Shown here piece after piece: positions 15,063 to 37,408 of a DNA stretch of 64,000 bases. The first letter of the stretch is position 1. The number at the start of each line of letters is the position of its first letter. The stretch covers positions 62,001-126,000 of the IMG/VR virus record IMGVR_UViG_3300028536_000014. One strand, 5' to 3'. Below the pieces are notes generated by a model, which worked only from the letters and a program-made list of their open reading frames with translations, was not told where the DNA came from and did not search any database. The translations under genes and the position numbers were made by a program.

Positions 15063-15706
15063 CTTACCACTATAGCTTTCGCTACCATTAAGAAGTATTC
15101 AGCCTTCACTCTTATAGAGTTATTAACTCAGAGCTATTCCTTACTAACTTCTACATGTTTGTGGTCTGGACTGTACCTTAACCTTAGTTCCAACAGAACT
15201 TTTGATGACTCAGCTACACGGTTTCCCGGCTTTTTATCGAAGTTACTTCGCTAGTCAAAGAAATGCTAATTACTAGAATTAGATCATCGCAATGAAAACT
15301 TTAGGTTGTTGCCTACCAGTCTCTACACGTTTTCTTCTCAAGAACAGTCTGTGGAGATCTAATGTTCTATCCCGGTATCATTACTCCCCAACCATTTCTG
15401 GTCACCGGCTCACATCTACCATACGGTAGCTATTGAAGAATTTCGCTCGGTATTAGCATATGAACTGCAACAGACAACTCACTTAGCTTTCACCGACTTT
15501 GACAACATTCACCCTAGCCCTTACCCCGTTGATATTATCTCTGGACGATGATATCTCTATCACCTATTTATAATGGATGCTAGTTTATACGTCTTTCGAT
15601 TGAGTTGTTTCATGAGGGTAGTGAGAGCTTCAACTCACATAAGCTTTTATTCTTCCAACTCTGTTTTACCAACTCATTTTTCGTAGGTGCTCAAATTAAA
15701 GTACTT
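15063..15706 (-). ncRNA. Group I intron, ORF-less (644 nt), in the tRNA-Leu anticodon
   Basis: P1 CTT|AAG with TTTGAG (U.G at the splice site); core motifs AAAGTCGGTGAAAGCT, GCTAATACCGAG, GTAGAGACTG, AAGGTACAGTCC; terminal G. Confidence 0.88.
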
Positions 15707-15738
15707 AAGTTCCCTTTTCTACAAACTACCAACAACAT

Positions 15739-15824
15739 TGGTGCCCAGGGGGGGACTCGAACCCCCAAAAACCACGGGTTTTAAGCCCGCAAAATGTGCC
15801 ATTCTTTATTAGGTTCACCCAGGC
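15739..15824 (-). tRNA. tRNA with UAA anticodon (Leu), enlarged D region and no long variable arm
   Basis: GCCTGGG/CCTGGGC acceptor, GCGGG-CTTAAAA-CCCGT, GGGGG-TTCGAGT-CCCCC, A-CCA. Confidence 0.75.
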
Positions 15825-15833
15825 TAATACAAA

Positions 15834-16697
15834 TCAGAGATAACTGTATTCTAAATCAGCTATCTTTGCAAAACCTTTTCTTCTTACTTGGTGATTAACA
15901 GCATCGTAACTATGACCGGTTTCTTTGATAGCTTCAGTTAAAGAATTATATATCGTTACTAACTTCCTCACGATATCTTTAACACAAACTATTTTGCGAT
16001 ACCCACCAGTTCTATGACCGTTAACAATATTTCCTTCACCAAGCTGTGTCATTTTCTTAAGATCAAGAATTGGCCACGGATTTCCATCAGCATATTTAAA
16101 CGCGTGATAATCAACGTGATAACCAAAGTTAAGACCTTTTCTTAAACATTTAGAAACTGTTGCTGGATGAACTTCAAATCTTTCGGAGAATTCTCTCAAC
16201 GAATACATAAGAAATTCTCTTGGTTCTAAACCAAGATATTTAACTGCGATAGGTTTGTTATCGCTCATAAATCCAGACAATCGTGCATGTTCTACATTCT
16301 CTTTTCCAGTACACCATTCAAGGTTATCTGGAAGATTATGTAGTTGATTTCCATCACAATGATTAACTTCTAAATTACTAAAAGATTTATCTAGATGTCT
16401 AGATGGTCGACCAATGAAAGTTTTTGCTATCAATCGACTAAATTTATGACATACAGGTTTTTTGCCAGGGCTTGTTATAATTACACCTACCGTACCATTA
16501 CCAGAAAGTTGTGGTTTTAACAAGTTACCTGTATGTATGTTTACTATTTTTCCATCTCGACTAACACCAAGTCTTTTGTCATCAGGAAAGTAAAAGAAGT
16601 TATCGAAACCGAGTACCGGTTCAGGATGAACTTCTTCCAAATCAGAAGGATCATTCATCCTTACTACGGCACTCATATCAAGACTCCTGTTGTTCAA
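15834..16697 (-). CDS. Free-standing HNH homing endonuclease (NUMOD4/HNH type)
   Basis: VSRDGKI...LKPQ...RLIAKTFI...VNHCDGNQLHNLPDNLEWCT.KEN..HA. Confidence 0.88.
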   Translation of the reverse strand: MNNRSLDMSAVVRMNDPSDLEEVHPEPVLGFDNFFYFPDDKRLGVSRDGKIVNIHTGNLLKPQLSGNGTVGVIITSPGKKPVCHKFSRLIAKTFIGRPSRHLDKSFSNLEVNHCDGNQLHNLPDNLEWCTGKENVEHARLSGFMSDNKPIAVKYLGLEPREFLMYSLREFSERFEVHPATVSKCLRKGLNFGYHVDYHAFKYADGNPWPILDLKKMTQLGEGNIVNGHRTGGYRKIVCVKDIVRKLVTIYNSLTEAIKETGHSYDAVNHQVRRKGFAKIADLEYSYL

Positions 16698-16750
16698 AAT
16701 GTGTATTCCAGTTCCACCACGCTTCCACAGTCGTGTGACACATTATTGCA

Positions 16751-17080
16751 TTACTTGGAAACGATTTTCTTCTTCTTTGGTTTGCTTCTTGGTGTGTATT
16801 TGACCTTAAGCAATGGAAGATTCTTCCAAGTTGTTTCGTTATTGCTATACGACTGTCCGAAGATCAAGACATCACCGATTCTAAAACAATCAGACGTTGT
16901 CTTGATTTCAACCAACTCGGTTGTACCAATTTGACCACCTATATAAAGGTGTCGTTCTCCAACAGCGATGATTTCGATATGAGAATCACGCTTATTTGAA
17001 GCTGGTAGATGTTGAAAAGGAATCGAAAGAATGTATCCTTTCAACTTCCCTCTGGGTTTGATTGGTAATGAAGTTTTCAT
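16751..17080 (-). CDS. Hypothetical protein, paralogue of 20464-20790
   Basis: Shared pattern GKL...IP...EIIA...G..GT..LVEI.T..D...I.DV. Confidence 0.55.
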   Translation of the reverse strand: MKTSLPIKPRGKLKGYILSIPFQHLPASNKRDSHIEIIAVGERHLYIGGQIGTTELVEIKTTSDCFRIGDVLIFGQSYSNNETTWKNLPLLKVKYTPRSKPKKKKIVSK

Positions 17081-17281
17081 GCTTCCCCTTATTTTGATAG
17101 ATATGAAAGTATGTCATTGAAATGTATTAACATCTCGATTAATGCAAGGAATAAAAGGTAAGGGACAAGATCAGAGATAATACCGATAATCTCGATGAAT
17201 AGATCGATTAAGTTAGATCGAATCTTTTTGTTTTCCAGTAAAGATTTACCTTTTTTCTTTTGCATGACACGACCCTATTTA

Positions 17282-17563
17282 TTAGTCAGCTGACTTCCAT
17301 CGAATATCTCGATAGATGTCGAGTGCATCCGATAAAGCGTTGATCATCATCTTCTGATGGAAGCCGAACACCACCATGTAGAAAACGACAGCTAACGGGT
17401 AATTGCTCAAGCAGCTGAGATAGAGGAGACCACCGATGAAGAAGTTATAACGTTTGAATGCTTCGAAATGCGCCGTCTTCGTCGCAAAACATAGGGTTGT
17501 ATGGAGACAAAAACCAATGACATTCCACACAACAAAGATAGAAAGAATGAGGTGATAATTCAC
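17282..17563 (-). CDS. Hypothetical membrane protein
   Basis: Two to three hydrophobic segments. Confidence 0.5.
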   Translation of the reverse strand: MNYHLILSIFVVWNVIGFCLHTTLCFATKTAHFEAFKRYNFFIGGLLYLSCLSNYPLAVVFYMVVFGFHQKMMINALSDALDIYRDIRWKSAD

Positions 17564-17599
17564 TATAACACTCCTTTAATAAATAGATCGGATTGATTC

Positions 17600-17620
17600 T
17601 CAGCTAGAATATATGTGACT
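17600..17620 (-). promoter_or_regulatory. Putative phage promoter motif
   Basis: tcagctagaatatatgtgact; same 21-nt spacing at 18177, 28193, 29713, 31244, 33995, 38525, 54254 and 56298, mostly intergenic. Confidence 0.6.
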
Positions 17621-17686
17621 GAAATTTTTTAATAAGGTGAAAAAAAAAGACATCCAAGAATAATATCCGGATGTCTTTTTATGTTT

Positions 17687-18142
17687 TTATGTTTTAAGCA
17701 TAGCAGTAGCGTTATTGATAGCAGCTACCGTATCTTCCACACTTTCAGGATCTTTCACACCTTCTTTCTTTCTAAGCGCATCAGCAGCACGTTCAATGAT
17801 AGCCATAGCTTCAGCAGAATGTTTATCCTGCTGCTTGATCCATTCACGAAAGAAGTCTGTCTTGCGTAATGTTTCTAATGCCTGCACGATATCGGGGTGT
17901 TCTCCACTAGCGATGTCAACTTGCATTTTCTTGAGAAGATGATTAAGAACCTTAACTTCTTCATTGATGTTCTGAAGTAAAGCTAATGCTTTCTCTCTTT
18001 TTGTAAGTTGTTTCGGTACTTCTGATTTCTTATTCATAGGTAACTCCGATAGTGAAGATAAGACAGGTTGTGGCAATATCCATGATGGTGGCATCATCCA
18101 ACGTGTCTTTGATATTTTGAATGAATTGTGGATGATTATCAT
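17687..18142 (-). CDS. Hypothetical coiled-coil protein (true start probably internal, MNKKSE)
   Basis: Helical, charged ORF. Confidence 0.5.
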   Translation of the reverse strand: MIIIHNSFKISKTRWMMPPSWILPQPVLSSLSELPMNKKSEVPKQLTKREKALALLQNINEEVKVLNHLLKKMQVDIASGEHPDIVQALETLRKTDFFREWIKQQDKHSAEAMAIIERAADALRKKEGVKDPESVEDTVAAINNATAMLKT

Positions 18143-18176
18143 AGTGTGTTATTTTAGACATGATTAACGACAGATG

Positions 18177-18197
18177 TCAATTAGAATATATGTCATT
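18177..18197 (-). promoter_or_regulatory. Putative phage promoter motif
   Basis: tcaattagaatatatgtcatt. Confidence 0.6.
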
Positions 18198-18219
18198 AAG
18201 ATCTTTTCAGAACTTGATA

Positions 18220-18603
18220 TCATTTTAAAAGCTGACCAATGACCTCACCGATCTCTTTACCTGCTTCACGGATCGCTTTACCAACTTCATGAGTTAGGAA
18301 GATTTGTTCTTTCCTATTATTAACTGTTTCTTGATCATACCACAACCATCGGTGTGAACCGTTGAATCTCATAAACATAGATGTCAATTTATCACATTTA
18401 AGACAATAACAATAAGCGATGTCGATAAGCGCTTCATCATAGTTGACGATCTTGTTTTTTGTGTTGTGTGTATGAAATCCTATTCGACATAAGAATGGTT
18501 TCTTGATGGGTTCTGGTGGAGTCCATGCATCGTAAGATGGAAGATCTTCAAGTTCTTCTGGTTTGGATGTCTTATTAATGATAGCTGGTTCTGAATCATT
18601 CAT
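18220..18603 (-). CDS. Hypothetical protein
   Basis: FLCRIGFH...YCYCLKC. Confidence 0.55.
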   Translation of the reverse strand: MNDSEPAIINKTSKPEELEDLPSYDAWTPPEPIKKPFLCRIGFHTHNTKNKIVNYDEALIDIAYCYCLKCDKLTSMFMRFNGSHRWLWYDQETVNNRKEQIFLTHEVGKAIREAGKEIGEVIGQLLK

Positions 18604-19076
18604 GTTTTAGGTCCTTTAAACATAGGTCGCCAATGAGTAGCATGGATAACCACAACATAATCAACAGTCCCAGCTCGTATCCACTGTCTCTTATACCAAT
18701 AACCAACTGCAATAATTGGTTCTGAATTTTCCGCAACACCGTTGAGTTCTCCACTTATTTTACCATAAAGAAAAAGTGGTTTATTATCAAAAACATCGAT
18801 TAACATTCCATCGATTACATTTGATTTAACTTTAACCATTGGTGCTGTTTCAATTGGAAACCATTCATCATCTACAATAGGAACGACAACATGAGTTTCC
18901 GTATCATAGATTTTATAACGTCCATGATCGATACTGTTAATTAACGGTATAATCATTGGACCGTAGTTTACTGGAGATTCTTTTTCAAAGAGAGGTTTAA
19001 CTAACTCTCGTTTAACGAATTCAAGAATTTCCTCATGTGTTAATTGATCCAATTGAGGGAATTTAGATTTAATCAT
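18600..19076 (-). CDS. Hypothetical phage protein (DUF551-like WxPIETAP...THWRP)
   Basis: EWFPIETAP and THWRPM motifs. Confidence 0.55.
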   Translation of the reverse strand: MIKSKFPQLDQLTHEEILEFVKRELVKPLFEKESPVNYGPMIIPLINSIDHGRYKIYDTETHVVVPIVDDEWFPIETAPMVKVKSNVIDGMLIDVFDNKPLFLYGKISGELNGVAENSEPIIAVGYWYKRQWIRAGTVDYVVVIHATHWRPMFKGPKT

Positions 19077-19156
19077 ATTTGTTTAACTCCACGAGGATAT
19101 TCTACATGTTCAGTGAAATACTGCATAAACTTTGACTGTTCCATGATAACTCCTTT

Positions 19157-19813
19157 TCAGTTGTAAATTTGTAATTTTGCATGAACTTCGAAATGACAAG
19201 ATAATTCATCGATTTCTGTTACAATCGCTTTTACTTGTTTCTTGATTTTTGGTGGAAATTTATTGTTTTCCACTTTCTCATCAGGATACTCATCTTGAAT
19301 TTTTTTATATTCCATTTCAAGGTCACGAATCTTCTTTAATGCCATTCCAATGTAAAGTAATCGGCCTGTATAAAATGGCATAACTTTCCAATTACAAGCT
19401 TTTAAAGCGGCTCGATAGATTTTATCAATTTCGTCATAAACAAAATAACCAGCTGTCGCAGCTGTCTCTATATCCCAATCAGAAGACCGCGTATAAAAGG
19501 AATCGTAGGCAATTGAAATAGGATTAACCGAAAGTGCACTACCATTGTTATAGAGTTCTTCTGCAAACCCATAAGGTTGTTTTATAACAGCGCCTATAGC
19601 TCCAACAGAGAGTTTATTATCCTTGAGAAAAGTACTCGTTGAGAAAGAGTTCAGCATGTGTGTACCATCTTTACCAAATGGTATCGCTAATGTTCCATTA
19701 GCTGGGTTAATAAGATCTTTCCAACCTATTTTTGTAGGCATAACATTAGGTTTCATAATGAATTGAGAAAAAGCAATTGACCCCGATCGAATAACTATTA
19801 ATCCAGTTGTCAT
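19157..19813 (-). CDS. Hypothetical protein
   Basis: 218-aa ORF. Confidence 0.55.
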   Translation of the reverse strand: MTTGLIVIRSGSIAFSQFIMKPNVMPTKIGWKDLINPANGTLAIPFGKDGTHMLNSFSTSTFLKDNKLSVGAIGAVIKQPYGFAEELYNNGSALSVNPISIAYDSFYTRSSDWDIETAATAGYFVYDEIDKIYRAALKACNWKVMPFYTGRLLYIGMALKKIRDLEMEYKKIQDEYPDEKVENNKFPPKIKKQVKAIVTEIDELSCHFEVHAKLQIYN

Positions 19814-20406
19814 TTTCTCACTCTCTTTTTAACACTTATCTTTTTGATAGGTTGTTTAGAATTGTACCAAGGTGTATCAATGATTGTTGAAAGATCTATC
19901 TTTGTAAATTCTGAAGTTACATCCGACACACTCATCGAAATGATTTGGTAAAATCTTTCAAAATTATCGATTTTATTACTATCGATAATCACATTAGCTG
20001 CCGATTTAGCTGTACCTGCAGTGTATGGAATATCACGTCTTAAATAAGTAAGACGACATCCATGGTCTATTTCGTGTTCAATATGAACAAACAAATTTCC
20101 CATTACCATGATGATGCTGGAAGATGTTGAGCGAGTTTTCTTATAAATTTGATCGAATGCTGCAGAGGCATTTTTCTCTGCTTCTTTATTATCGTCAGTT
20201 TTATAAAGCGAGTAGACACTAAGAATCTTTCGAGCTTTTTCCCATTCTTCAGGAATAAGAATGTGACCTACAGACACTCCAGCAAAATAACGATCATCGG
20301 AAACATAGGTCTTCTGAATTGTTTCGAAGATACTAAGTTTTTCCGTATTATTGGTCGAAGATATATCGGCTGTCAAGCAGTCACGATAATACATTGTTAA
20401 ACTCAT
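19810..20406 (-). CDS. Hypothetical protein
   Basis: 198-aa ORF overlapping the next start. Confidence 0.55.
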   Translation of the reverse strand: MSLTMYYRDCLTADISSTNNTEKLSIFETIQKTYVSDDRYFAGVSVGHILIPEEWEKARKILSVYSLYKTDDNKEAEKNASAAFDQIYKKTRSTSSSIIMVMGNLFVHIEHEIDHGCRLTYLRRDIPYTAGTAKSAANVIIDSNKIDNFERFYQIISMSVSDVTSEFTKIDLSTIIDTPWYNSKQPIKKISVKKRVRK

Positions 20407-20463
20407 AACGTTATAGATCCTCTCACATACTCCTATTGATGGAGTATGTGAGAGGATATTCCT

Positions 20464-20790
20464 TTATCGATTATTCGGCTTCTGGGTGGAACCCTGTCGA
20501 CGAGGAGTAGGTTCTGGAGTTTTCTCTGGAAGAGGTTTTGCGTACTTGACATATCCAACGATTTTTCCATTGATATCGAAATCCATGACATCTTTGATAC
20601 CAACTCCATCAGCATCTGTTTCGATTTCGACAAGAACGTTGGTTCCAGAGCGACCTACAAAAATGGTATCATTGACTTTGGCAATGATTTCAACAGCAAA
20701 TGCGGTATCAGCCAGAACATTCAACTTCTCTGCTGGGATTTTGATCTTTGACAACTTACCTGTTAACTTAGCCATGATTTTTTTTCTCAA
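20464..20790 (-). CDS. Hypothetical protein, paralogue of 16751-17080
   Basis: Shared pattern with 16751-17080. Confidence 0.55.
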   Translation of the reverse strand: MRKKIMAKLTGKLSKIKIPAEKLNVLADTAFAVEIIAKVNDTIFVGRSGTNVLVEIETDADGVGIKDVMDFDINGKIVGYVKYAKPLPEKTPEPTPRRQGSTQKPNNR

Positions 20791-20851
20791 ATTTCAAATG
20801 GAACTAAAAGTTGGTGAACATCGTTAAACTTTGAATCAATAAGAATCTGTT

Positions 20852-21247
20852 CTATTTTGTTTTGTTAGGTCCTAAAGTTTGTATCTTTTCTATTCCTAAG
20901 ACATCACGAATCTGTTCACGATCAGCATCAGATTCTGGGATTATAACGAGGACATTGTCTTCTTCATCCAATTCAAGTTTCATATTGAAATCTTCATTTT
21001 GGATAACCTTATTTAAATCATGTTTACCTTGGTCGGTTATTTTATTAAAAGACCACCACTTATCCCAACTATTGTCGTGTTTATAAAAACTGATTCCATT
21101 TTTAAATAGGGATCTGCAACTAGATGTTTCACAATCCAATCGGATTTTATCGATGTGTTCTTGAGAATCACATTTATTAACAAGAAATTCATGTTTCATA
21201 ACCATATTCCTCCAACTGGTATTTTGAACACAAAGTTGGAGAATCAA
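20852..21247 (-). CDS. Hypothetical protein
   Basis: ORF in a dense minus-strand run. Confidence 0.5.
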   Translation of the reverse strand: MILQLCVQNTSWRNMVMKHEFLVNKCDSQEHIDKIRLDCETSSCRSLFKNGISFYKHDNSWDKWWSFNKITDQGKHDLNKVIQNEDFNMKLELDEEDNVLVIIPESDADREQIRDVLGIEKIQTLGPNKTK

Positions 21248-21431
21248 AGAATTGATGTTTCTTCTGACTTACTTCACTGGAGTTATATGGTATAACATCA
21301 CCTTTGAAAGTTTTTGCTTCATCACACGGATGATGATAAGTCCTAATACACATCCCGCCTCGACAAGTATATTTTCGTTTATGAAAGAAGTTGTCTATAT
21401 CAGGTTTGTTAATATTCGAATAAGGTTTCAT
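21189..21431 (-). CDS. Hypothetical protein, paralogue of 21428-21679
   Basis: KP....F..K..Y.C..G.CI.T......T.KG....Y.S.E. Confidence 0.5.
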   Translation of the reverse strand: MKPYSNINKPDIDNFFHKRKYTCRGGMCIRTYHHPCDEAKTFKGDVIPYNSSEVSQKKHQFFDSPTLCSKYQLEEYGYET

Positions 21432-21679
21432 GGAGAGTAATAACCTTGTAAATTATCATTTATTTCCATTTTTGAAAACTCATTTGCTTTTTCAAAAATT
21501 CTCCATTTATCCATGATATCTTCTTCTGATTTATAATATACAAACCCACCTTTATATGTATCTCTACTTCCACTAAACATATAAAGAGTCGTAATACAGA
21601 ATCCTGTCTGACAAGGATAATCAGATTTACTAATAAACTGAGTCAGTTCTGGTTTGGTAATATTTAATTGACGTTTCAT
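21428..21679 (-). CDS. Hypothetical protein, paralogue of 21189-21431
   Basis: Same pattern. Confidence 0.5.
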   Translation of the reverse strand: MKRQLNITKPELTQFISKSDYPCQTGFCITTLYMFSGSRDTYKGGFVYYKSEEDIMDKWRIFEKANEFSKMEINDNLQGYYSP

Positions 21680-21682
21680 GCC

Positions 21683-22111
21683 TTAGGGTTTTATTCTACC
21701 TGACTTTAATAACTCTTGAAAAACATAAGCCCCATGGTAAGAACTTGCTTGATACCCCCATTCATACCCTTTCTTGATTTCTTCTTCTGGTAAGAGCGGA
21801 GGTGGTTTAACATATTGAGCGCACACACTCGGCATAGCTCTTCCACTGACGATGATTTTCGAACAAAGTTCTAAATCAAGAAGTGTATCTCGAGCTGATT
21901 TGGAAGGAACATCACCATCCCAAAGAGGACCAGAACGCATTAAAGCGACAAGTGTATCAAGTTCTGCACCGTTTAATTTACTAGCAGTATCTTTATACCA
22001 TTCATCCCAAGCATCAGAACGTTCATCAGAATCAGGATGAGATTCACAAGTAGGAAATGGTTTAAATCGAGGTTCTTTTTTCCTAGTCTCGATATTGGCA
22101 AACTTTGTCAT
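21683..22111 (-). CDS. Hypothetical phage protein
   Basis: GPLWDGDVPSKSARD motif. Confidence 0.55.
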   Translation of the reverse strand: MTKFANIETRKKEPRFKPFPTCESHPDSDERSDAWDEWYKDTASKLNGAELDTLVALMRSGPLWDGDVPSKSARDTLLDLELCSKIIVSGRAMPSVCAQYVKPPPLLPEEEIKKGYEWGYQASSYHGAYVFQELLKSGRIKP

Positions 22112-22123
22112 GTTAGTTCCTTT

Positions 22124-22408
22124 TCATAAACACAAAAGAATGATTTTTGGAACGATATAACCTATTCCACTAAAGATAGAGACGAGTAAGACAAAAGCAA
22201 AAACGATTCCGTAATATAATGATTGATCAAACAACCGAATAGTAATGTTGATAACAAAATAGGTCAAACCATAAATTGGAAAACCGTAGAAGTAATCTAA
22301 GAAACTTTTCTCTTTGTCCTCTTTATCGAGGTAATGATTAAAGAAGAAAACAACTGCATTACCAACCCAAATGAACAGAGCCGCGTCTGTTATTAAGAAA
22401 ACGTACAT
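22124..22408 (-). CDS. Hypothetical membrane protein
   Basis: Three hydrophobic segments. Confidence 0.5.
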   Translation of the reverse strand: MYVFLITDAALFIWVGNAVVFFFNHYLDKEDKEKSFLDYFYGFPIYGLTYFVINITIRLFDQSLYYGIVFAFVLLVSIFSGIGYIVPKIILLCL

Positions 22409-22410
22409 GA

Positions 22411-22614: not shown

Positions 22615-22631
22615 ATAAGGTTTCCATTTTG

Positions 22632-23916: not shown

Positions 23917-23925
23917 AACTAATCC

Positions 23926-29733: not shown

Positions 29734-29796
29734 AAAAACAAATGAGAACAAAAAAAATAGAAGAGGCTAGTGCCTCTTCTATGTTACGATTTATCA

Positions 29797-30186: not shown

Positions 30187-30724
30187 GCCAATTAGATTCT
30201 TCCTCTGTTAGAAGAAAGAATGATTTGTAGTGGTCAACAAGATTAGTACCATCTAACAATTTCTGTTTATCCCACATTTCTTTGAAAACTTCATTACTAG
30301 GAAATTTTCCTTCGAAAATATTAGTCAGATATTCATAGGTAATGATACGTTTATTCTCGATGTCGTTGGCAAACAATGTATGAGTAATAACAGCAACCAA
30401 CATAGATATGTGACTAGGATTGATTACCATGCAAGAAAGAAATATCAACGCTTTCCCAGTAAATTCAATACCGAAAATGAGAAATCGTTCAGCTATATAT
30501 TTTCTTGGGCCATTATCTCTTTCTGATAAACTAAGATAAAGATAAGTCGCTGGTATCGTATCAAACTCTGGATGTAGTGATTCATAGTCATCTTTATCAA
30601 AAGCCTTTATAATGTTTTTGATGCTATCGGTAAATGGTTCGCATTTGTCCCAGAATTCATCAACCCATTCTGTTGCAAGTGTTTTGAGTTTGATACAGGT
30701 TTTGATATCATATTCTGTGTTCAT
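30149..30724 (-). CDS. Hypothetical protein
   Basis: 191-aa ORF. Confidence 0.55.
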   Translation of the reverse strand: MNTEYDIKTCIKLKTLATEWVDEFWDKCEPFTDSIKNIIKAFDKDDYESLHPEFDTIPATYLYLSLSERDNGPRKYIAERFLIFGIEFTGKALIFLSCMVINPSHISMLVAVITHTLFANDIENKRIITYEYLTNIFEGKFPSNEVFKEMWDKQKLLDGTNLVDHYKSFFLLTEEESNWLAEHPEEEITNG

Positions 30725-31221
30725 GTTTTTCTCTTATTTAAATGTTGTCGTAAATGGTATTCCATCGATCTCATTTCACAGAATGATTTAGGAATTTGAA
30801 GTTTATTTCTTAAGTAGGATGCTTCTTTGTTATAACCTGTATTAACGACTTTTTGATTTAATATGAAGTGTCGTTTTAATTGTTTCCAGGCTTTTGTAAT
30901 ATAACCATTTCTACGATATTTCTTTTTAATAAAGAAAGAAGTTAATCGACTCCATACAAGAATACAACCGATTAAGTCATTTAGTTCATCGTAGATAAGA
31001 CAAACAATAAAGAAAGGTCTTTCATGTTTTTGTTTATTGAAAGTCCATTTTAATTTTTCGTTTACATAAAAAGGTTGAACATCTGTTTTCATTTTTAAGA
31101 AACGTTCACATTCTGATTTGATAAAACTACCATCTTTATCTGTAAAATGTAGTTTATCTTTTAATATTAAAGAACATGCAGCAATATATTCATAATGTGT
31201 TCTGGCTATTTTTATTTTCAC
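30721..31221 (-). CDS. Possible GNAT acetyltransferase-like protein
   Basis: FFIKKKYRRNGYITK resembles the acetyl-CoA-binding motif A. Confidence 0.4.
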   Translation of the reverse strand: MKIKIARTHYEYIAACSLILKDKLHFTDKDGSFIKSECERFLKMKTDVQPFYVNEKLKWTFNKQKHERPFFIVCLIYDELNDLIGCILVWSRLTSFFIKKKYRRNGYITKAWKQLKRHFILNQKVVNTGYNKEASYLRNKLQIPKSFCEMRSMEYHLRQHLNKRKT

Positions 31222-31243
31222 TATTGATGACCTTTGATGGATG

Positions 31244-31264
31244 TCAATTTAAGTATATAGAATC
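31244..31264 (-). promoter_or_regulatory. Putative phage promoter motif
   Basis: tcaatttaagtatatagaatc. Confidence 0.55.
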
Positions 31265-31333
31265 AAAAAGATTTGAAAATAAAAAAAAAATAGAGAGAGC
31301 CATCAGGCTCTCTCATGTTTAAGTAACAATTCC

Positions 31334-31948
31334 TTATTTGATTGCTACGCCATAATTAAGAAGACCATTATTATGACTATTTGAAGAAACTTGGAATTTA
31401 AACGTTAACACACTCCCAGATTTTGTCATCAATTTTGAACCATTACGAATAAATGGGTAGAGATAAAGCGGAATCAACATAATGATCGGTTCTAACGGAC
31501 CTATGTCTTGCATCGGATCGTTTCGATCGTGATGACCGAAATCCAGCTTTTCAAATTGCCAAGGTGTCAAATCGTTGGGATCGAAGTCGGTTAATTTCGT
31601 TATCTTATTAAGAAAACCTCCGTCGAAAAACGCTATTGAATCAGTGATAACATTCACATCGAACATATCCGGGTATTCTGTATCGCCCGGTACTTTGTGA
31701 GTATGATCCAGCATGACACCAACACGCATGAGCATGTTAGAACGAATAGCTCTACAGAACTTGAATGCCTCTTCGGCTTTCCTGGCTTTGGCTGCTTTAC
31801 TGATGATTTCAGTATTCATAAATTTCTCGATAGTAATAACATGAAAGATAGAGATAGCCATATGGCTATCTCTATCTAATTTGCTCAACCAAATGCTTAT
31901 TGACCCACTGTTCATCCCAGATACAAAATGCTCTGTGACGATTACCAC
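31334..31948 (-). CDS. Hypothetical protein (true start probably MNTEII)
   Basis: ORF. Confidence 0.5.
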   Translation of the reverse strand: MVIVTEHFVSGMNSGSISIWLSKLDRDSHMAISIFHVITIEKFMNTEIISKAAKARKAEEAFKFCRAIRSNMLMRVGVMLDHTHKVPGDTEYPDMFDVNVITDSIAFFDGGFLNKITKLTDFDPNDLTPWQFEKLDFGHHDRNDPMQDIGPLEPIIMLIPLYLYPFIRNGSKLMTKSGSVLTFKFQVSSNSHNNGLLNYGVAIK

Positions 31949-32735
31949 CCATCATGATACCACCAGAATATTCAAACCCATTGTAACCATAGGGTTCTAG
32001 AACATGTCGGATCTCACGATAAATGGTTGTGAAATATTTATTCAGTGGATTTCTATCAGCTTGTTCGATATTGAACTTGATAAACAGGTCTTTATCTTTA
32101 ATGGGGCTATCAGGCCAAACAGTTCGGTAACGACCAAACTGAATTTGATTATCCCAGATCAGTTCCCAAAAAGCAGGATCGTAAACTTGATCAATTTTAA
32201 AAACGGATTGGTTAAATTCTTTTTCATCGAAAACAAATCTGGAAAGATATCCAGTTGGTTCTCCATGATGATACTCCACTTTGATAGGACGTCTTCCATG
32301 ACTGTCTTTCAAAGTACTTGTATACTCTGCAGTGATTTTTTCATCATCTTTTAACTGATCATAAAGCGCTCTATATTGTTGAAGTGCTTTTTGTTCTTTC
32401 TTGGACAACTCACCATGTCGTTTAGGATTGTCGATTTTTACCTTAAGCACGTAGACGTTAACGTCTTCAAACTTCGGAAGACCATCAACGTTAATAAATG
32501 ACATAAAGGCTCTTTCGTAAGCATCCAATCGGTTAAAAGCAGATTCGTTAAATAGAACTTCAACCCGGTGAGATTTTCTAGACCAGTTTCCTTTTTTACG
32601 ATAAGTATCTGCAATCTTCTCAGAGTTTGTGAGATATATGCCTTGTCCAACCAGACATGTAGACTTAGTCTTCTTGAACTTGAATTCATCAATTACTGTT
32701 GAATCACCACGATACAAAATGAGTTGTTTTGACAC
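31872..32735 (-). CDS. ADP-ribosyltransferase-fold protein (ART-PolyVal-like)
   Basis: LYRG.....EF........GQGIYLT.....A..Y at the N-terminus; GYNGFEY...AFCIWD at the C-terminus. Confidence 0.5.
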   Translation of the reverse strand: MSKQLILYRGDSTVIDEFKFKKTKSTCLVGQGIYLTNSEKIADTYRKKGNWSRKSHRVEVLFNESAFNRLDAYERAFMSFINVDGLPKFEDVNVYVLKVKIDNPKRHGELSKKEQKALQQYRALYDQLKDDEKITAEYTSTLKDSHGRRPIKVEYHHGEPTGYLSRFVFDEKEFNQSVFKIDQVYDPAFWELIWDNQIQFGRYRTVWPDSPIKDKDLFIKFNIEQADRNPLNKYFTTIYREIRHVLEPYGYNGFEYSGGIMMGGNRHRAFCIWDEQWVNKHLVEQIR

Positions 32736-32813
32736 ATAAACTCCTAATGTTCTAGATTAAAGTATCTCCCTCAGTCGTTATAGACTGAGGGAGAGTTATG
32801 TTGTCTTTTTGAT

Positions 32814-33119
32814 CTATGTTCCGTAATGATGATGACGAAACTTATAGTCATGGATTTTCCATCCCATCCTTTCCAGTCTCTTAAACAGCTTGAGGATATG
32901 AGACGGATTGATATGCGGACCACGACCATCTTTGTAATTCAATTTGTCCCAGAGAATCTTGGTCTCATTAACCGAGTCGAACGGACGATCTGTAGCTACA
33001 CACCCACGACGTGATTTACCAATTGTGAATCCACTACCGGACGTCAAATCCACGGATTTACTGGTTGCCGAAATGAAGGCATTCGTTCCATGAACCGAGA
33101 AAGCGATATAGTATTGCAT
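32814..33119 (-). CDS. Hypothetical protein
   Basis: 101-aa ORF. Confidence 0.5.
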   Translation of the reverse strand: MQYYIAFSVHGTNAFISATSKSVDLTSGSGFTIGKSRRGCVATDRPFDSVNETKILWDKLNYKDGRGPHINPSHILKLFKRLERMGWKIHDYKFRHHHYGT

Positions 33120-33123
33120 TGTT

Positions 33124-33489
33124 TTACCCTTTTATGGCACTGTAATGTTTGAAAACAATATCGAAGAATACTTCTTCGAGAGTTTCCATTGCAGCAAAAA
33201 TAATGAATGAAGTACAATATTTTTGCTGTCGTTGAGTTATCTTCAGTGTGTAATTATTAACATCACAAGGAGTAAAATTACCCTTCAGAAGAATTTCGAT
33301 TGTCTTGTGTTCCCACCTATAGGCAAGATCATAGATGGTACCTTTGAAATATTCTTGATTTTCTTCAACCTCGATACATGTAGCTTCGAAGCCCAAGACT
33401 TCAGTGATTTTATCTCGATAGACATCGAGATGTTTCAATCTAGTCGGATCAATTCTTTTGATGATTTCTTTAAGGTTATCGATTTTCAT
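33124..33489 (-). CDS. Hypothetical protein
   Basis: 121-aa ORF. Confidence 0.5.
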   Translation of the reverse strand: MKIDNLKEIIKRIDPTRLKHLDVYRDKITEVLGFEATCIEVEENQEYFKGTIYDLAYRWEHKTIEILLKGNFTPCDVNNYTLKITQRQQKYCTSFIIFAAMETLEEVFFDIVFKHYSAIKG

Positions 33490-33517
33490 GTCAAACTCCG
33501 TGCTTCGATCAAAAGAA

Positions 33518-33946
33518 TTAGGTGTGTTGTGTTGGATTGGTTACAAAGGTTTCCAATCCATATTTACGTGAAAGACGATCACGAAGATATTTCGCATTCT
33601 GTTTATCACGAAAACCAATGATTTCTTTCTTGGTATTCACGATCAGTGTGTTATTGTTATCACGTAATGCAAACAGAGAATCTTCTTTCGGAATGATTCT
33701 CTGTTGATCCAGATATTGTTCCAGCGTTGTAACGACGATGACTTTAGGAGCATCGCCAGCTTTCTTCTTTTCAGACAGGAGCTTAGCAGCACGTAGCTGG
33801 TGAGTTATTGGAGATGCTTCAGCAGCTAGCGCATTAATCTCATCAGTTTGCATTTGTAACATCGCGTCATTAACACGATGCTCTTCCTCAGATTCCTCAA
33901 AACCACCACTGAGACGCCTGAATTTTCCACTCATGTTTTTCTCCAT
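33518..33946 (-). CDS. Hypothetical protein
   Basis: 142-aa ORF. Confidence 0.55.
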   Translation of the reverse strand: MEKNMSGKFRRLSGGFEESEEEHRVNDAMLQMQTDEINALAAEASPITHQLRAAKLLSEKKKAGDAPKVIVVTTLEQYLDQQRIIPKEDSLFALRDNNNTLIVNTKKEIIGFRDKQNAKYLRDRLSRKYGLETFVTNPTQHT

Positions 33947-34152
33947 TCAAAAATAGTTGAACTTCTCGGAAATTAAATTAGTCTGTTATAGCGACTACCT
34001 AATGTATATATAATCGAATAATTTTAATAATAGAACAAAAAAAAACACAAAATACAAATTTGTGTTTTTTAGAACGATCTTACAATGTCTGCATCAATAA
34101 AATCGGTATGATTCTCTAACTGATTAGATTTACTGATATGCAGTGCCATGAG

Positions 34153-34521
34153 TTATGATTCCCAAAGTTTGATATTCCACGCCCCTGTTTTTCCAAAACT
34201 ATATCTGGAATTATTGATTTGTACATTCTTCCACCCAGCATTCGTATATCTAGAAATCAACTCATTTTGAATAACTGTTGAAATCTCACGATCTGTAGTG
34301 ATAGGAATTATCCAGTAGAACATCTCTTGACTTTCATGTACGTATCTTTGTGCGTTTTTTCTCATCCAAGATGTGTTGTTCAGATACACATCGATGACTG
34401 TTTCGAAGTTTAAAAGTTTCTTCTTAATGCTGTCATCAGTTTCTGGTTGTTAGCTACTATCATTTACCTGACTCTGAGTTGGTTTTAACAACTCGATAAC
34501 ACGATTTCTTGTAGTTGGCAT
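34153..34521 (-). pseudogene. Member of the tandem AGW family with an in-frame TAA at codon 24
   Basis: ATG at 34521 (MPTTRNRVIE...), TAA at 34450-34452, frame then continues to the YTNAGWKNV motif. Confidence 0.6.
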
Positions 34522-34538
34522 ATAAACCTCCTAAAACG

Positions 34539-34871
34539 TTAATTAAGATCCCAAAGAGAGATGTAGAACATCTCCTCGTTAGTTGATTTCCGGATGATGT
34601 TAACAGAATACCAACCCACTTGTTCGTAGCGCTCTTTCAGCGTCTTCTGATCTTCTTCAGTCAAGCCGGTCATGATCGGAATCAACCAATGTCGCTTGAT
34701 GGTTTTTGAACCATAAGTCAATTGGTTTTTTAACATCCACTCTTTATTACAAAGATGTCTGTCGATAAGAAGTTCAAGAACTTCTATGCTCGGAGTAATG
34801 GGTTTCTCATCCAGAGTGAAGTTTTCGAAACGTGCTACTAGTTCTAAAGCGATGTCAATATGGAGGGCCAT
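34539..34871 (-). CDS. Tandem paralogue family member (Y..(A/V/S)GW..V)
   Basis: ID.HL...EW....W.IPI...RYEQVGW.SV. Confidence 0.6.
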   Translation of the reverse strand: MALHIDIALELVARFENFTLDEKPITPSIEVLELLIDRHLCNKEWMLKNQLTYGSKTIKRHWLIPIMTGLTEEDQKTLKERYEQVGWYSVNIIRKSTNEEMFYISLWDLN

Positions 34872-34913
34872 AATAAAGGTTCCTTTTAAACAAAGATGAT
34901 GAAGGGACCTTTA

Positions 34914-35234
34914 TTAAGATCCCCAGAGTGTGATATTCCAAGTCCTGATATTCTTATCATCAGGAACACTATGATTAATACGAACGTGTTTCCATCCAGC
35001 GTTTGAATACCGGAAAACAAGTTCAAGCTGAACACCAATTGGGATTTCGTCCTCAGTAATCGGAACGACCCAGTATTTGATATCTTGATAAAGAGATACG
35101 TTATCTTTGATCCATTCCGTGCTAAACAAATGAGCATCGATCCTGGATTCCAATTTCGTAACGATGTCGTTCTCAACGATAGGTGAGTTAACGGACTTGA
35201 ATGACTGAATGACATATTCTCTTGACGTAGCCAT
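34914..35234 (-). CDS. Tandem paralogue family member
   Basis: IDAHL...EW...WVVPI...RYSNAGWKHV...W.I.LW. Confidence 0.6.
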   Translation of the reverse strand: MATSREYVIQSFKSVNSPIVENDIVTKLESRIDAHLFSTEWIKDNVSLYQDIKYWVVPITEDEIPIGVQLELVFRYSNAGWKHVRINHSVPDDKNIRTWNITLWGS

Positions 35235-35258
35235 ATAAGGCTCCTTATGAGTGATTGT

Positions 35259-35591
35259 TTATTCCGGTATATTACAACAGAGTTCGATGGTCCAGGTTTT
35301 CATTTCTTGTTCGTCGGAATTATATATTCTAACGAAATTCCAACCACTTTCTCCATATAAAACCGCTAGAGAATTTCTGACCTCTATACTGAGTTCACCC
35401 TGGAAACATAAAGTACAAACCATTCTTCCATTCAAAATATGAACGGCATGTTCGTCCAATTGGAGATGAAGTGAAATTTTGGATAAAGCGACTTCGATCA
35501 ACTCGATTGCGTAGTTCAAACACAATTCATGAACTTTCATTCCTTGTCGAAGAGGAATAGAAGCTAGAACTGAAGTAGGTGATGTTGGCAT
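35259..35591 (-). CDS. Tandem paralogue family member (divergent)
   Basis: LYGESGWNFVRI...WTIEL. Confidence 0.55.
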   Translation of the reverse strand: MPTSPTSVLASIPLRQGMKVHELCLNYAIELIEVALSKISLHLQLDEHAVHILNGRMVCTLCFQGELSIEVRNSLAVLYGESGWNFVRIYNSDEQEMKTWTIELCCNIPE

Positions 35592-35654
35592 GATAATTCT
35601 CCTGGTAATTTTTGTATCAACCTAGAACCAACTAGCTTCAACACAACACGTGGT

Positions 35655-36056
35655 TTAATCTTTCCAGACAACATAACCTGGAACTGGCCAAGAATATGTA
35701 ATCTTTCGATTGTACGGAGGAAGTGCTACTTCACCACGTTTGTGGATGAGAACGACGTCTACTTCGTTTTCAATAAATTGGAAAATACTACGAGCATAAG
35801 AGATATTAGGATATGAATCTGTTGCTCCAAGCCAATCGGCACGAGGGGCCGCCATTGGGTAGTTATCCGGATATTGGGATGGATTGACAATGAAGTCTTT
35901 AGCAACAATGGTCATACCAATTTCATCTAACATCGTAAGATATACACCGGTATCTGTTTCACCCGGATTAATAATACGTGTTACTCTCATTTCTTCCAAC
36001 AATTTTTTGTAATTCTCAGGAGTCTTTTCCATAAATGTTTCCTCTTGTTGTTTCAT
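35655..36056 (-). CDS. Hypothetical protein
   Basis: 133-aa ORF. Confidence 0.55.
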   Translation of the reverse strand: MKQQEETFMEKTPENYKKLLEEMRVTRIINPGETDTGVYLTMLDEIGMTIVAKDFIVNPSQYPDNYPMAAPRADWLGATDSYPNISYARSIFQFIENEVDVVLIHKRGEVALPPYNRKITYSWPVPGYVVWKD

Positions 36057-36086
36057 TAAAAAGATTTATGACGAATATAAAACAAA

Positions 36087-36118
36087 ACGGAGACCTAGGC
36101 CGAAACCTAGGTCTCCGT
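36087..36118 (-). terminator. Intrinsic terminator at the end of the intron-containing RNA
   Basis: acggagacctagg/cctaggtctccgt stem with TTTTGTTTT following on the minus strand. Confidence 0.7.
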
Positions 36119-36119
36119 A

Positions 36120-36593
36120 CTTGCCGTTGCTTAGAACAACATCGAACAAACATCTGACATATACTGATTACGACTAACGACCTATAACCACGAAAACGCA
36201 GATCGTGTCATTACAACCTTTACCAATAGGAGTCAGATATTCAAAACGCAGATCGCGTCGTTTGATCGAGTGTGATGATTTCTATACCAACTCACGGAGG
36301 TATAGCAGAACATTCATCACGATAGTGCCGATATTAACATACGAGTGAAGGATCGTTGATTTAACGCCCCAGTGCTTATATGTATCAATGAGCTAAGTTC
36401 TGTACCTTTCTATCCTACTCTAGTCCTAGTAAATCAAAGACACGGACTCTGGTTTCCCAGCTATCCCTTACCCTCGGAAGTATAACCCAATCTGCGCCTA
36501 TTAAGAGGACCAACAGCTCTAAGGGTTAACGTTTTGAAAGATTAATCAGTAGTTTTCACTACCGTCTAAGATTTTTGTTTCAAGGGAAAACAA
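36120..36593 (-). ncRNA. 3-prime exon of an unidentified large structured RNA
   Basis: ORF-free; hairpins such as GGTAGT-GAAA-ACTACT and CTGG-GAAA-CCAG; repeated CGATCTGCGTTTT. Confidence 0.55.
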
Positions 36594-37408
36594 CTACCAC
36601 TATAGCTTTCGCTACCAATAAAAAGCGTTCAATGTTTCACTCGTATTGAGTTATTAGCTCAACGTGCTATTATTTACTAACTTTACATGTTTGTGGTCTT
36701 GACTCTTTTAAGCATATAGCTCAGCTTCATCTCGCTAGAGGTTCTATTAGTTACTTGCTAGACTTACACTTGGTCTGATTCTTAAAGATTACTTCCGTCT
36801 GTCGGGAAAGATATGACTCTTTACTCCTAAGATTTCATCTATTCAGAAATAAGACTCTTCGCTTCCCGTCATCACTTTCACGCTGTATTAGGCGCTATTT
36901 AGCTTGTTGCCATTGAGTCTCTACACGTTCTAATCCAATTACCTGTTGTGCACATTTACTGTCACAACGCGGGTATAAACACGGTATATACATCACCGCA
37001 CTCGTTTAACCGATCAGTAATTCAGATTCGTTTCGCTCGGTATTAGCGTAGGATGGACCACTCATTCATTGAAGACTTTTTGTGTTCCCTATAGCTATAA
37101 CCGACTTTGACAACATTCACCAACATCTATATTAAGACATGATCGCCATGGAGACTAGGATTTCTCCGGTATTCCATATAGCTATTATCCATATCCTTCA
37201 GCTTGCTGAAATCACATTTCTCAAAGAAGACTGAGGGTCTGCTATTCAGTAGATGTTTATACGTCCTTTCGGATTGAGTTGTTTTCGCATTTTTAGATGG
37301 GGGTTCTCATACTTCCCCGGCAGCTCAGATTTAGGCTGAGTCCCAAACTTTTACCGTGCCGATTTTACCAACTCATTTTTCGTAGGTGCCCTTACATTAC
37401 ACGGTTAA
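36594..37408 (-). ncRNA. Group I intron, ORF-less (815 nt), paralogous to the tRNA-Leu intron
   Basis: Six shared blocks with 15063-15706; P1 TCT|TTA with TAAGGG; P7 GACTC/GAGTC; terminal G. Confidence 0.85.

What the first reader, a model, noticed from the sequence alone, without database searches (positions are those of the whole stretch)
15063..37408. The two RNA-gene introns are paralogues with a compensated catalytic helix
Shared blocks include taccactatagctttcgctacca, acatgtttgtggtct, gtctctacacgtt, ttcgctcggtattagc, accgactttgacaacattcacc and ttttaccaactcatttttcgtaggtgc. P7 is GACTG/CAGTC in one and GACTC/GAGTC in the other, and each internal guide sequence is retuned to its own exon. 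Peripheral regions differ and are large. Inference: intragenomic transposition of an ORF-less intron to a new host RNA, perhaps by reverse splicing, with both copies kept active. The RNAP intron is a different lineage.
Basis: partly seen in the sequence, partly recalled or inferred. Interest (0 to 1): 0.62.

Follow-up and report, generated by a model that had tools for sequence, protein, structure and literature searches.

The report
Paired tRNA-type introns in jumbo phage
A giant nucleus-forming phage carries two related, unusually large self-splicing (group I) introns, one at the classic site of a leucine-tRNA gene and one stranded in non-coding DNA with a worn catalytic core; it is a neat but not revolutionary case of how such introns spread.

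Summary
Two elements on the minus strand, 15063-15706 (644 nt) and 36594-37408 (815 nt), share exact blocks and are each other's closest relatives. Both belong to a tRNA-type (IC3-like) group I intron family that I found in many phage tRNA genes. On a core tree they are sisters (98/93 support), nested among tRNA-Leu(UAA) introns.

Each has its own P1 with a U.G pair, an omega-G and a P10 matching its own flanks (chance p about 0.0007 and 0.0035). So the "retuned guide" claim holds.

- **P7 pair:** the "compensated" pair is the distal, least conserved one (mismatched in 7 of 31 family members).
- **Copy 2 core:** it breaks the otherwise invariant P7 closing G-C pair. It also has a J8/7 two nt short, an altered J4/5 and a lost P5 receptor. 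Its branch is about 3.7 times longer than copy 1's.
- **Copy 1 host:** it keeps a perfect tRNA-Leu 3' half but has no canonical 5' half.
- **Copy 2 host:** it lies in a 1.8-kb non-coding gap with no recognisable RNA gene.
- **Route:** reverse splicing is untested. A free-standing HNH endonuclease next to copy 1 offers a DNA-level alternative.

The RNA polymerase intron is indeed unrelated.

The parts
15063..15706 (-). Intron copy 1, 644 nt, ORF-less group I intron of the tRNA type. First base is A15706 and omega-G is G15063.
   Evidence: Rfam Intron_gpI 43.3 bits, E 8e-9 in a 5-kb search, below the gathering score of 50. Family model R1 gives 51.4 + 19.2 bits. Homology to the Atu_ph07 tRNA-Leu intron. 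Boundaries from P1, P10 and the family 3' end GUGGUAAG|.
15690..15695 (-). Internal guide sequence of copy 1 (UUUGAG). It pairs with exon CUU plus intron AAG (P1) and with 3' exon AAA (P10).
   Evidence: Sequence. Shuffle test p = 0.0007.
15707..15715 (-). What remains of the 5' exon of copy 1: anticodon-stem strand AGGGA plus ACUU, with one extra A compared with relatives.
   Evidence: Compared with 5' halves of related phage tRNA-Leu genes. No acceptor or D stem upstream. ARAGORN fails both with intron search and on the in-silico spliced sequence.
15013..15062 (-). 3' exon of copy 1: an intact tRNA-Leu 3' half (AAAA, anticodon-stem strand UCCCU, long variable arm, T arm, acceptor strand, A73, CCA).
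   Evidence: 85-96% identical to tRNA-Leu 3' halves of other phages.
15317..15323 (-). P7 5' strand of copy 1, G(A)GACUG. It pairs with CAGUCC at 15168-15173.
15739..15824 (-). Intron-less, unorthodox tRNA with anticodon UAA, immediately 5' of the copy-1 locus. It carries the empty-site loop CUU AAAA.
   Evidence: Rfam tRNA 32.6 bits. ARAGORN tRNA-Leu(taa).
15834..16697 (-). Free-standing HNH endonuclease gene beside the tRNA/intron locus. It is a candidate trans-acting mobility factor.
   Evidence: PHROG 59 HNH endonuclease, E 4.5e-27. Pfam HNH_3 is only sub-threshold (20.6 bits against a cut-off of 24.8, E 3.3e-4). A 25%-identical homologue sits next to an intron-bearing tRNA in L042.
36594..37408 (-). 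Intron copy 2, 815 nt, ORF-less paralogue with a divergent core. First base is U37408 and omega-G is G36594.
   Evidence: Shared blocks. Sister of copy 1. No Rfam hit at E <= 10. R1 gives 16.6 + 9.4 bits. Family HMM sums to 51 bits against 87 for copy 1.
37389..37394 (-). Internal guide sequence of copy 2 (UAAGGG). It pairs with exon UCU plus intron UUA (P1). GUAA pairs with 3' exon UUGU (P10).
   Evidence: Sequence. Shuffle test p = 0.0035.
36915..36921 (-). P7 5' strand of copy 2, G(A)GACUC. It pairs with GAGUCA at 36700-36705. The distal pair is C-G. The closing pair is G x A, where it is G-C in the other 30 distinct family sequences compared, copy 1 included.
36706..36709 (-). J8/7 of copy 2, AAAA. 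This is two nt shorter than the family's AAGGUA-type 6-mer.
36057..36593 (-). 3' flank of copy 2: non-coding, structured (z = -3.4), ending in a strong intrinsic terminator at 36087-36118.
37409..37847 (-). 5' flank of copy 2: non-coding, with no RNA family or ORF.
36549..36562 (-). Extra P9a-type GNRA hairpin 31 nt after copy 2's 3' splice site. A second one lies at 37809-37822, about 400 nt before its 5' splice site. Both may be relics of other intron 3' ends.
   Evidence: 4 matches in the window against 0.13 expected. R1 segment match 13.6 bits.

Best explanation
The two elements are paralogous, ORF-less group I introns of the tRNA-anticodon-loop (IC3-like) family. That family turns out to be common in phage tRNA genes.

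Copy 1 sits at the ancestral home of the family, between U34 and A35 of a tRNA-Leu(UAA). Its catalytic core is close to the family consensus. I predict it splices by the ordinary two-step guanosine-initiated mechanism: P1 with a U.G pair, omega-G docking in P7, and P10 aligning the 3' exon. Its host now has only the anticodon-stem strand of the 5' half plus a perfect 3' half, so the product is probably not a normal tRNA. An intron-less tRNA(UAA) lies just upstream.

Copy 2 is a derived, ectopic copy in a 1.8-kb non-coding stretch. Since the split it has kept P2, P3, P4, P6, P8 and the shared P9 extension. It has also co-evolved its guide sequence with its own flanks, which argues that splice-site recognition was under selection for much of that time. 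Its core is now the most deviant in the family, so it is either a weakened ribozyme or a decaying relic.

Shown: homology, sister relationship, helices, P1/P10 fit and core deviations. Inferred: splicing activity, direction of transfer and the transfer mechanism.
For: **Group I identity**
- Rfam hit for copy 1.
- Family alignment with covarying P2, P3, P4, P5, P8 and P9.
- Family model hits on both copies.

**Family context**
- 46 viral stretches carry the 3' block, most inside tRNA-Leu, Arg, Ser or Lys genes and tRNAs with other anticodons.
- 24 GenBank phage records also match.

**Paralogy**
- Sisters at 98/93, nested with the tRNA-Leu(UAA) introns L021, L039, L012 and L033.
- Identical P3 and a shared 105-nt P9 extension at 87% identity.
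- No closer relative elsewhere.

**P1 and P10**
-.

**Structure kept through change**
- Different sequences form equivalent P6 and P8 closing stems and P7 distal pairs.

**Copy 2 decay signals**
- 6 deviations at 51 highly conserved columns, against 1 for copy 1.
- Terminal branch 0.48 against 0.13.
- Lowest family HMM score among full-length introns that carry the exact 3' block: 51 against 87 bits.
- P7 closing pair broken only in copy 2.

**Hosts**
-.
Against: - No splicing data exist.
- Both copies fall below Rfam's gathering score (43.3 bits, and no hit).
- The tree rests on 130 partly paired columns from sequences that I selected by an exact 23-mer.
- Copy 2's good P1/P10 fit sits oddly with a dead core. 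Its correlated J8/7 and P7 changes could be a working alternative architecture.
- Copy 1's pristine 3' exon beside a ruined 5' exon is not what simple pseudogene decay predicts. An assembly error at the adjacent tRNA-like repeat cannot be excluded, since the contig comes from one metagenome.
Confidence: 0.62

Rival explanations
1. Both are fully active introns interrupting genuine RNA genes, and copy 2 arose by reverse splicing of the excised tRNA-Leu intron into a new host RNA, followed by reverse transcription and recombination.
For: P1 and P10 fit their own exons in both copies. The flanks of the two copies are not significantly similar (p about 0.1 and 0.15), as expected for insertion into an unrelated RNA. 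The copy-2 5' exon contains ACUU two nt from the junction. The 3' flank is structured (z = -3.4) and ends at a terminator.
Against: No RNA family, tRNA or conserved homologue exists for the copy-2 flanks. The only relative of the neighbouring gene has no such gap. Copy 2's core deviates at otherwise invariant positions. The present guide sequences differ, so the target would not have matched the ancestral guide without later change. No reverse transcriptase was noticed in the window. Reverse-splicing mobility has no direct experimental support (review PMC3984707).
Confidence: 0.15
2. DNA-level origin. Copy 2 is an old segmental duplicate of the whole intron-bearing tRNA-Leu gene whose exons decayed beyond recognition. 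Alternatively it came from ectopic homing promoted by the neighbouring free-standing HNH endonuclease.
For: An HNH gene lies about 130 bp upstream of copy 1's 5' splice site and directly upstream of the adjoining intron-less tRNA, and a homologue lies beside an intron-bearing tRNA in L042. Other family members carry an ORF inside the intron whose product has HNH-type motifs by eye; I did not search it against any family library (L006, L008). There are faint collinear flank motifs (GUAGAAA..ACUU upstream, UCCCU.G downstream) and a GGGA/UCCC exon-exon helix in both copies. Extra P9a-type hairpins around copy 2 suggest repeated intron-derived debris.
Against: Flank similarity is not significant. 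There is no HNH gene near copy 2. The endonuclease's target is unknown.
Confidence: 0.35
3. Independent acquisitions. The two introns entered this genome separately from related donors rather than by intragenomic copying.
For: Peripheral P2.1, P5, P6 and P8 extensions are unalignable. Core path length from copy 1 to L021 (0.56) is about the same as from copy 1 to copy 2 (0.61). The P2 module is shared with introns of other phages: L020, L050, L060 and L063. Sampling was limited to exact-word scans.
Against: The copies share a long stem branch (0.39) with 98/93 support, an identical P3 and a private P9 extension. No other genome in three collections has either.
Confidence: 0.12
4. Exaptation. 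The conserved large P2 and P9 domains mean the RNAs, or at least copy 2, now serve as structured non-coding RNAs or processing ribozymes rather than as introns.
For: Strong conservation of a peripheral 105-nt P9 domain at 87%, while other parts are saturated. Copy 2 sits in non-coding DNA with GNRA hairpins nearby.
Against: There is no comparative support and only one genome. Whole-intron folding energies are unremarkable. P1 and P10 are kept, which is what an intron needs.
Confidence: 0.06

Closest known systems
Cyanobacterial and plastid tRNA-Leu(UAA) group I intron (Anabaena type) and the Azoarcus tRNA-Ile intron (subgroup IC3)
   Same: Copy 1 has the same insertion site, CUU|AAAA between U34 and A35. 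The core motifs are the same (J3/4 AAA, P4, P6 closing pairs, GUAGAGACU..AGUCC P7). There is an L9 GAAA loop with an 11-nt receptor in P5 (copy 1) and exon pairing in the anticodon stem. The comparison with the Azoarcus and Anabaena sequences is from my own knowledge. The site is also described in 10.1101/2020.01.27.920355.
   Different: The window introns are 3-4 times larger (644 and 815 nt against about 200-250), with added P2, P2.1, P5, P6, P8 and P9 extensions. They are in a phage. Copy 1's tRNA lacks a normal 5' half, and copy 2 is not in a tRNA at all.
Unannotated tRNA-Leu(UAA) intron of Agrobacterium jumbo phage Atu_ph07, and about 40 further phage tRNA introns found here
   Same: They share the 3' terminal module (P9 ACCAC/GUGGU enclosing the UAGC-GAAA-GCUA hairpin) and the core blocks.
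   Different: Most are compact (178-290 nt) and sit in canonical tRNAs. Some carry an ORF inside the intron whose product looks HNH-type by eye. Several genomes have 2-3 copies, but in different bona fide tRNAs.
Related group I introns at different rDNA sites, taken as circumstantial evidence for reverse splicing (PMC1299323; review PMC3984707)
   Same: Paralogous introns at two different sites in one genome, each with site-matched guide sequences.
   Different: Those hosts are functional rRNA genes. Here the second site has no recognisable gene, and the copy shows core erosion.
Phage introns served by a free-standing homing endonuclease (cyanophage psbA case; from my own knowledge)
   Same: An ORF-less intron with an HNH gene next door.
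   Different: No cleavage data exist. The neighbour here also includes an intron-less tRNA carrying the empty site.

Membership tests
Group I intron | Conserved core in the order P3-P4-P5-P6-P7-P3'-P8-P7'-P9 | tested here: met
   Both copies align block by block to 29 family members. The family alignment shows covariation in P2, P3, P4, P5 and P8. Helices were drawn for both copies.
Group I intron | P1 with a U.G wobble at the 5' splice site, formed with an internal guide sequence, plus P10 to the 3' exon | tested here: met
   Copy 1 CUU|AAG with UUUGAG, P10 AAA/UUU. Copy 2 UCU|UUA with UAAGGG, P10 UUGU/GUAA. Chance p = 0.0007 and 0.0035.
Group I intron | Omega-G as the last intron base | tested here: met
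   G15063 in GUGGUAAG| and G36594 in GUGGUAG|.
Group I intron | G-binding G-C pair in P7 with a bulged A and a closing pair | tested here: inconclusive
   The G-binding pair is present in both. The closing G-C pair, invariant in the other 30 sequences, is G x A in copy 2.
Group I intron | Score at or above Rfam RF00028 gathering score (50 bits) | tested here: not met
   Copy 1 scores 43.3 bits (E 8e-9 locally). Copy 2 has no hit at E <= 10. This is a detection threshold and not a defining property. Large loop insertions depress the score. The RNA polymerase intron scores 59.5.
Group I intron | Self-splicing with guanosine and Mg | not testable with these tools
   Needs a bench assay.
tRNA anticodon-loop (IC3-type) introns | Located in the anticodon loop of a tRNA gene | tested here: inconclusive
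   For copy 1 the site and 3' half are tRNA-Leu(UAA), but no canonical 5' half exists. For copy 2 the feature is not met: there is no tRNA in the flanks.
tRNA anticodon-loop (IC3-type) introns | L9 GNRA loop docking into an 11-nt receptor in P5 | tested here: inconclusive
   The L9 GAAA hairpin is identical in both. The receptor GCUAAG/UAUGC is kept in copy 1 and changed to GCUAUAG/CUACGC in copy 2. Docking itself was not tested.
tRNA anticodon-loop (IC3-type) introns | Subgroup assignment with subgroup-specific models | not tested
   No subgroup library is on hand. The assignment rests on homology to tRNA-Leu introns and on my recollection of the Azoarcus and Anabaena cores.
Homing-endonuclease-carrying mobile intron | Endonuclease ORF inside the intron | tested here: not met
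   No ORF of 100 aa or more on the intron strand. The largest in copy 2 is 33 aa, and the opposite-strand 121-aa ORF has no family support.

The most novel reading that the evidence does not exclude
Copy 2 is still an active intron, and the roughly 1-kb RNA made by joining its flanks (about 37847 to the terminator at 36087) is a genuine, so far undescribed non-coding RNA of a nucleus-forming phage. The intron would have been seeded from the tRNA-Leu intron by RNA-level reverse splicing, with the guide sequence re-tuned afterwards. That would be a rare natural record of group I intron retro-transposition into a new kind of host RNA.
Probability: 0.12. Interest if true: 0.72.

Novelty: new variant of a known kind. 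Interest (0 to 1): 0.42.

Why it matters
- **Guide-sequence change:** the pair is a natural before-and-after of group I intron relocation. The same ribozyme lineage sits at its ancestral tRNA site and at an ectopic site, each with a guide sequence matched to its own flanks. This is the kind of case used to argue for or against reverse splicing.
- **Overlooked phage introns:** tRNA-type group I introns are frequent in phage tRNA genes, including cultured phages where they are unannotated or overwritten by spurious CDS calls. A 2014 review stated that all phage introns then known were in protein genes (PMC3984707).
- **Practical uses:** better phage tRNA annotation, and large ORF-less ribozymes with conserved add-on domains for structural study.

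Tried and rejected
- **Host RNA of copy 2.** Rfam at E <= 10, ARAGORN, ORFs and three-frame translation across the junction and Pfam/PHROG searches of neighbouring and opposite-strand ORFs gave nothing. BLAST of both flanks against 50,697 phage records, against the window and against the fetched family introns also gave nothing.
- **Relatives of the phage.** The helicase found only the same contig. The 133-aa neighbour found one 49%-identical homologue, on short contigs with no equivalent gap.
- **Pattern scans.** The P9-extension pattern found only self. The P2 pattern in metagenomes gave self, a few tRNA introns and 7 chance hits. The P3-P4 18-mer gave 22 genome hits, all chance; I estimate about 17 would be expected.
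- **Flank homology between the copies.** Not significant.
- **Whole-intron folding energy.** Uninformative, z = -0.99 and -0.23. The 5' flank gave z = -1.2.
- **Covariance model.** R1 could not span the large insertions, so it gave only partial hits.
- **Rescuing copy 1's tRNA.** I tried an overlapping acceptor strand (CCCUGGG in the 3' end of the upstream tRNA) and a 5' splice site in the upstream tRNA. Both give non-canonical D regions or mismatched stems.
- **Custom dot-bracket structure.** I did not hand one to the pair-counting tool, to avoid long typed strings. P7 statistics were computed in a script instead.

Full report
**Setting.** The window is part of a 244.7-kb uncultivated phage contig, IMGVR_UViG_3300028536_000014, also assembled as Ga0137416_10000001. 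It encodes a chimallin-family protein and a multisubunit RNA polymerase piece. It is therefore a nucleus-forming, phiKZ-like jumbo phage with nearly all genes on the minus strand. It has no close relative among 50,697 GenBank phage records.

**Observation.** The quoted blocks occur exactly twice, collinearly, with none expected by chance. Read on the minus strand, the elements are 15706->15063 (644 nt) and 37408->36594 (815 nt). BLAST between them gives 111 nt at 84% (E 6e-28) plus five shorter blocks at 84-100%.

**What they are.**
- Copy 1 matches Rfam Intron_gpI at 43.3 bits. This is significant locally (E 8e-9) but under the gathering score of 50. Copy 2 gives no Rfam hit.
- The 3' flank of copy 1 is a tRNA-Leu 3' half. 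The last 23 nt of the intron match Agrobacterium phage Atu_ph07, which has an unannotated 278-nt intron splitting a textbook tRNA-Leu(UAA) between U34 and A35.
- Scanning IMG/VR with that 23-mer gave 46 stretches. Most are introns in phage tRNA genes: Leu-UAA, CAA and UAG, Arg-UCU, Ser-UGA, Lys-UUU, CAU, UCA and others. A few are in protein genes. Several contigs carry two or three.
- 24 GenBank phage records also match, mostly unannotated.
- An alignment of 15 compact members shows covarying P2, P3, P4, P5 and P8. P9 and its inner hairpin are nearly invariant across them.
- The core motifs are those I recall from the Azoarcus and Anabaena IC3 introns (own knowledge).

**Paralogy and direction.**
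- On 130 core columns from 31 distinct sequences, copies 1 and 2 are sisters (98% ultrafast bootstrap, 93% SH-aLRT) on a shared stem of 0.39.
- They are nested with the tRNA-Leu(UAA) introns L021, L039, L012 and L033.
- Copy 2's terminal branch is 0.48 against 0.13 for copy 1.
- They share an identical P3 and a private 105-nt P9 extension at 87% identity. The P2.1, P6 and P8 extensions are unalignable.
- A P2 module is shared with introns of other phages: L020, L050, L060 and L063.
- No closer relative was found in viral, metagenome or genome collections.
- Rows left out of the tree: loci lacking one of four core anchors, and duplicates.

**Splice sites.** Copy 1 has exon CUU plus intron AAG paired with UUUGAG, omega-G at G15063, and 3' exon AAA paired with the UUU of the guide. 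Copy 2 has exon UCU plus intron UUA paired with UAAGGG, omega-G at G36594, and 3' exon UUGU paired with GUAA. Shuffled flanks reproduce such a combined P1/P10 in 0.07% and 0.35% of trials. So the retuning claim stands. It argues that splice-site recognition was selected in both lineages.

**The 'compensated catalytic helix'.** P7 is G(A)GACUG/CAGUCC in copy 1 and G(A)GACUC/GAGUCA in copy 2.
- The pair that differs (G-C against C-G) is the distal one. Across the family it is A-U in 19, U-A in 3 and mismatched in 7 of 31, so it is weakly constrained.
- The closing G-C pair next to the bulged A and the G-binding pair is invariant in the other 30 sequences. Only copy 2 breaks it, as G x A.
- Copy 2 also has J8/7 AAAA instead of the 6-nt AAGGUA type, and J4/5 AUA instead of AAN. 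Its P5 tetraloop receptor is changed from GCUAAG/UAUGC to GCUAUAG/CUACGC.
- Copy 2 deviates at 6 of 51 highly conserved columns, against 1 for copy 1.
- It has the lowest family-HMM score among the full-length introns that carry the exact 3' block, 51 bits against 87. Two relatives found through the P2 pattern, L050 and L062, score about the same at 53.
- With the family covariance model, copy 1 scores 51.4 + 19.2 bits and copy 2 scores 16.6 + 9.4.
- Activity of copy 2 is therefore in doubt. I put it near 40%.

**Hosts.**
- Copy 1's 3' exon is a pristine tRNA-Leu 3' half ending in CCA at 15013.
- Upstream, only AGGGA-ACUU survives, with one extra A. No acceptor strand or D stem follows the CCA of the preceding gene. 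ARAGORN finds no tRNA with intron search or after in-silico splicing.
- That preceding gene (15739-15824) is an intron-less, oddly expanded tRNA with the same CUUAAAA loop.
- A free-standing HNH endonuclease gene lies directly upstream of it. A homologue lies next to an intron-bearing tRNA in L042.
- Copy 2 lies in a 1.8-kb gap (36057-37847) with no ORF across the junction, no RNA family and no database match.
- A strong terminator sits at 36087-36118.
- Two extra P9a-type hairpins flank copy 2.
- The only homologue of the downstream gene has no such gap.

**Mechanism of copying.** This is unresolved. The flanks are not significantly similar, which fits insertion into unrelated sequence. Reverse splicing has no direct experimental support in general (PMC3984707). 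The HNH neighbour and the hairpin debris allow DNA-level routes.

**RNA polymerase intron.** The intron at 50541-50852 scores 59.5 bits with Rfam and shows a different P7 in the Rfam alignment. It is not matched by the family model or HMM, so it is a different lineage.

**Literature.** Bacterial tRNA introns of 21 site types are described (10.1101/2020.01.27.920355). I found no paper in the library describing group I introns in phage tRNA genes.

**Verdict.** This is a real and well-observed pair of paralogous tRNA-type group I introns. The claims of two RNA-gene hosts, of maintained activity in both, and of reverse splicing go beyond the evidence.

Noticed in passing
window 13270-13359 (-): A 90-nt fragment matches bacterial 23S rRNA positions 2126-2215 (the L1-stalk region by my own knowledge) at 63.6 bits, above the gathering score. 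It lies inside an ORF-poor gap of about 1.9 kb (12291-14151). It may be a phage-borne rRNA mimic.
   Followed up: no
window 14152-14226 (-): A complete-looking hammerhead ribozyme (stem I CUGUUA/UAACAG, CUGACGAG, CGAAAC, GUA cleavage triplet) starts about 20 nt after the CCA of tRNA-Thr (14226-14301). RAGATH-1 hammerhead scores 34.8 bits, below its gathering score.
   Followed up: partly
window 15739-15824 (-): An unorthodox tRNA with anticodon UAA. It has a perfect acceptor, anticodon and T arms, about 10 extra nt before the D stem, and no long variable arm.
   Followed up: partly
window 15834-16697 (-); L042 6610-7074: A free-standing HNH endonuclease gene lies beside the intron/tRNA locus. 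A 25%-identical homologue sits next to another intron-bearing tRNA in an unrelated viral contig.
   Followed up: partly
window 37809-37822 and 36549-36562 (-): Two extra GUAGYGAAARCUAY hairpins, each followed by UGAUWAAU, flank intron copy 2. There are 4 such hairpins in the window against 0.13 expected. They may be relics of other intron 3' ends.
   Followed up: partly
L002 about 2540-2860 (-) = MF403008.1 about 112,890-113,250: Agrobacterium phage Atu_ph07 has an unannotated tRNA-Leu(UAA) split by a 278-nt group I intron. A 'hypothetical protein' CDS (AUZ94936.1) is called over its 3' exon.
   Followed up: yes
L022 and L032 (viral contigs of 281 and 143 kb): Three intron-bearing tRNAs (Arg-UCU, Leu-UAA and a UCA-anticodon tRNA) sit within about 2 kb. 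So this intron family spreads among tRNA genes in other phages too.
   Followed up: partly
GenBank phages, e.g. LR756501.1, MH598807.1, MT774389.1: The same intron family matches 24 phage records, including a 735-kb huge phage, crAss-like phages and the capsid gene of Pelagibacter phage HTVC120P. Almost none are annotated as introns.
   Followed up: no
L015 and L016 (viral contigs): Family introns with a second terminal GAAA hairpin and non-tRNA flanks. In L015 an intact tRNA-Leu starts about 100 nt downstream. These are further 'orphan' introns beside tRNA genes.
   Followed up: no
window 5147-6358 (-): A TnpB / IS605 OrfB-type gene (OrfB_IS605, Cas12f1-like TNB and HTH domains) in the phage genome.
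   Followed up: no
window 50541-50852 (-): A group I intron (Rfam 59.5 bits) begins right at the end of an ORF encoding RNA polymerase Rpb1 domain 2. It is unrelated to the tRNA-type pair.
   Followed up: partly
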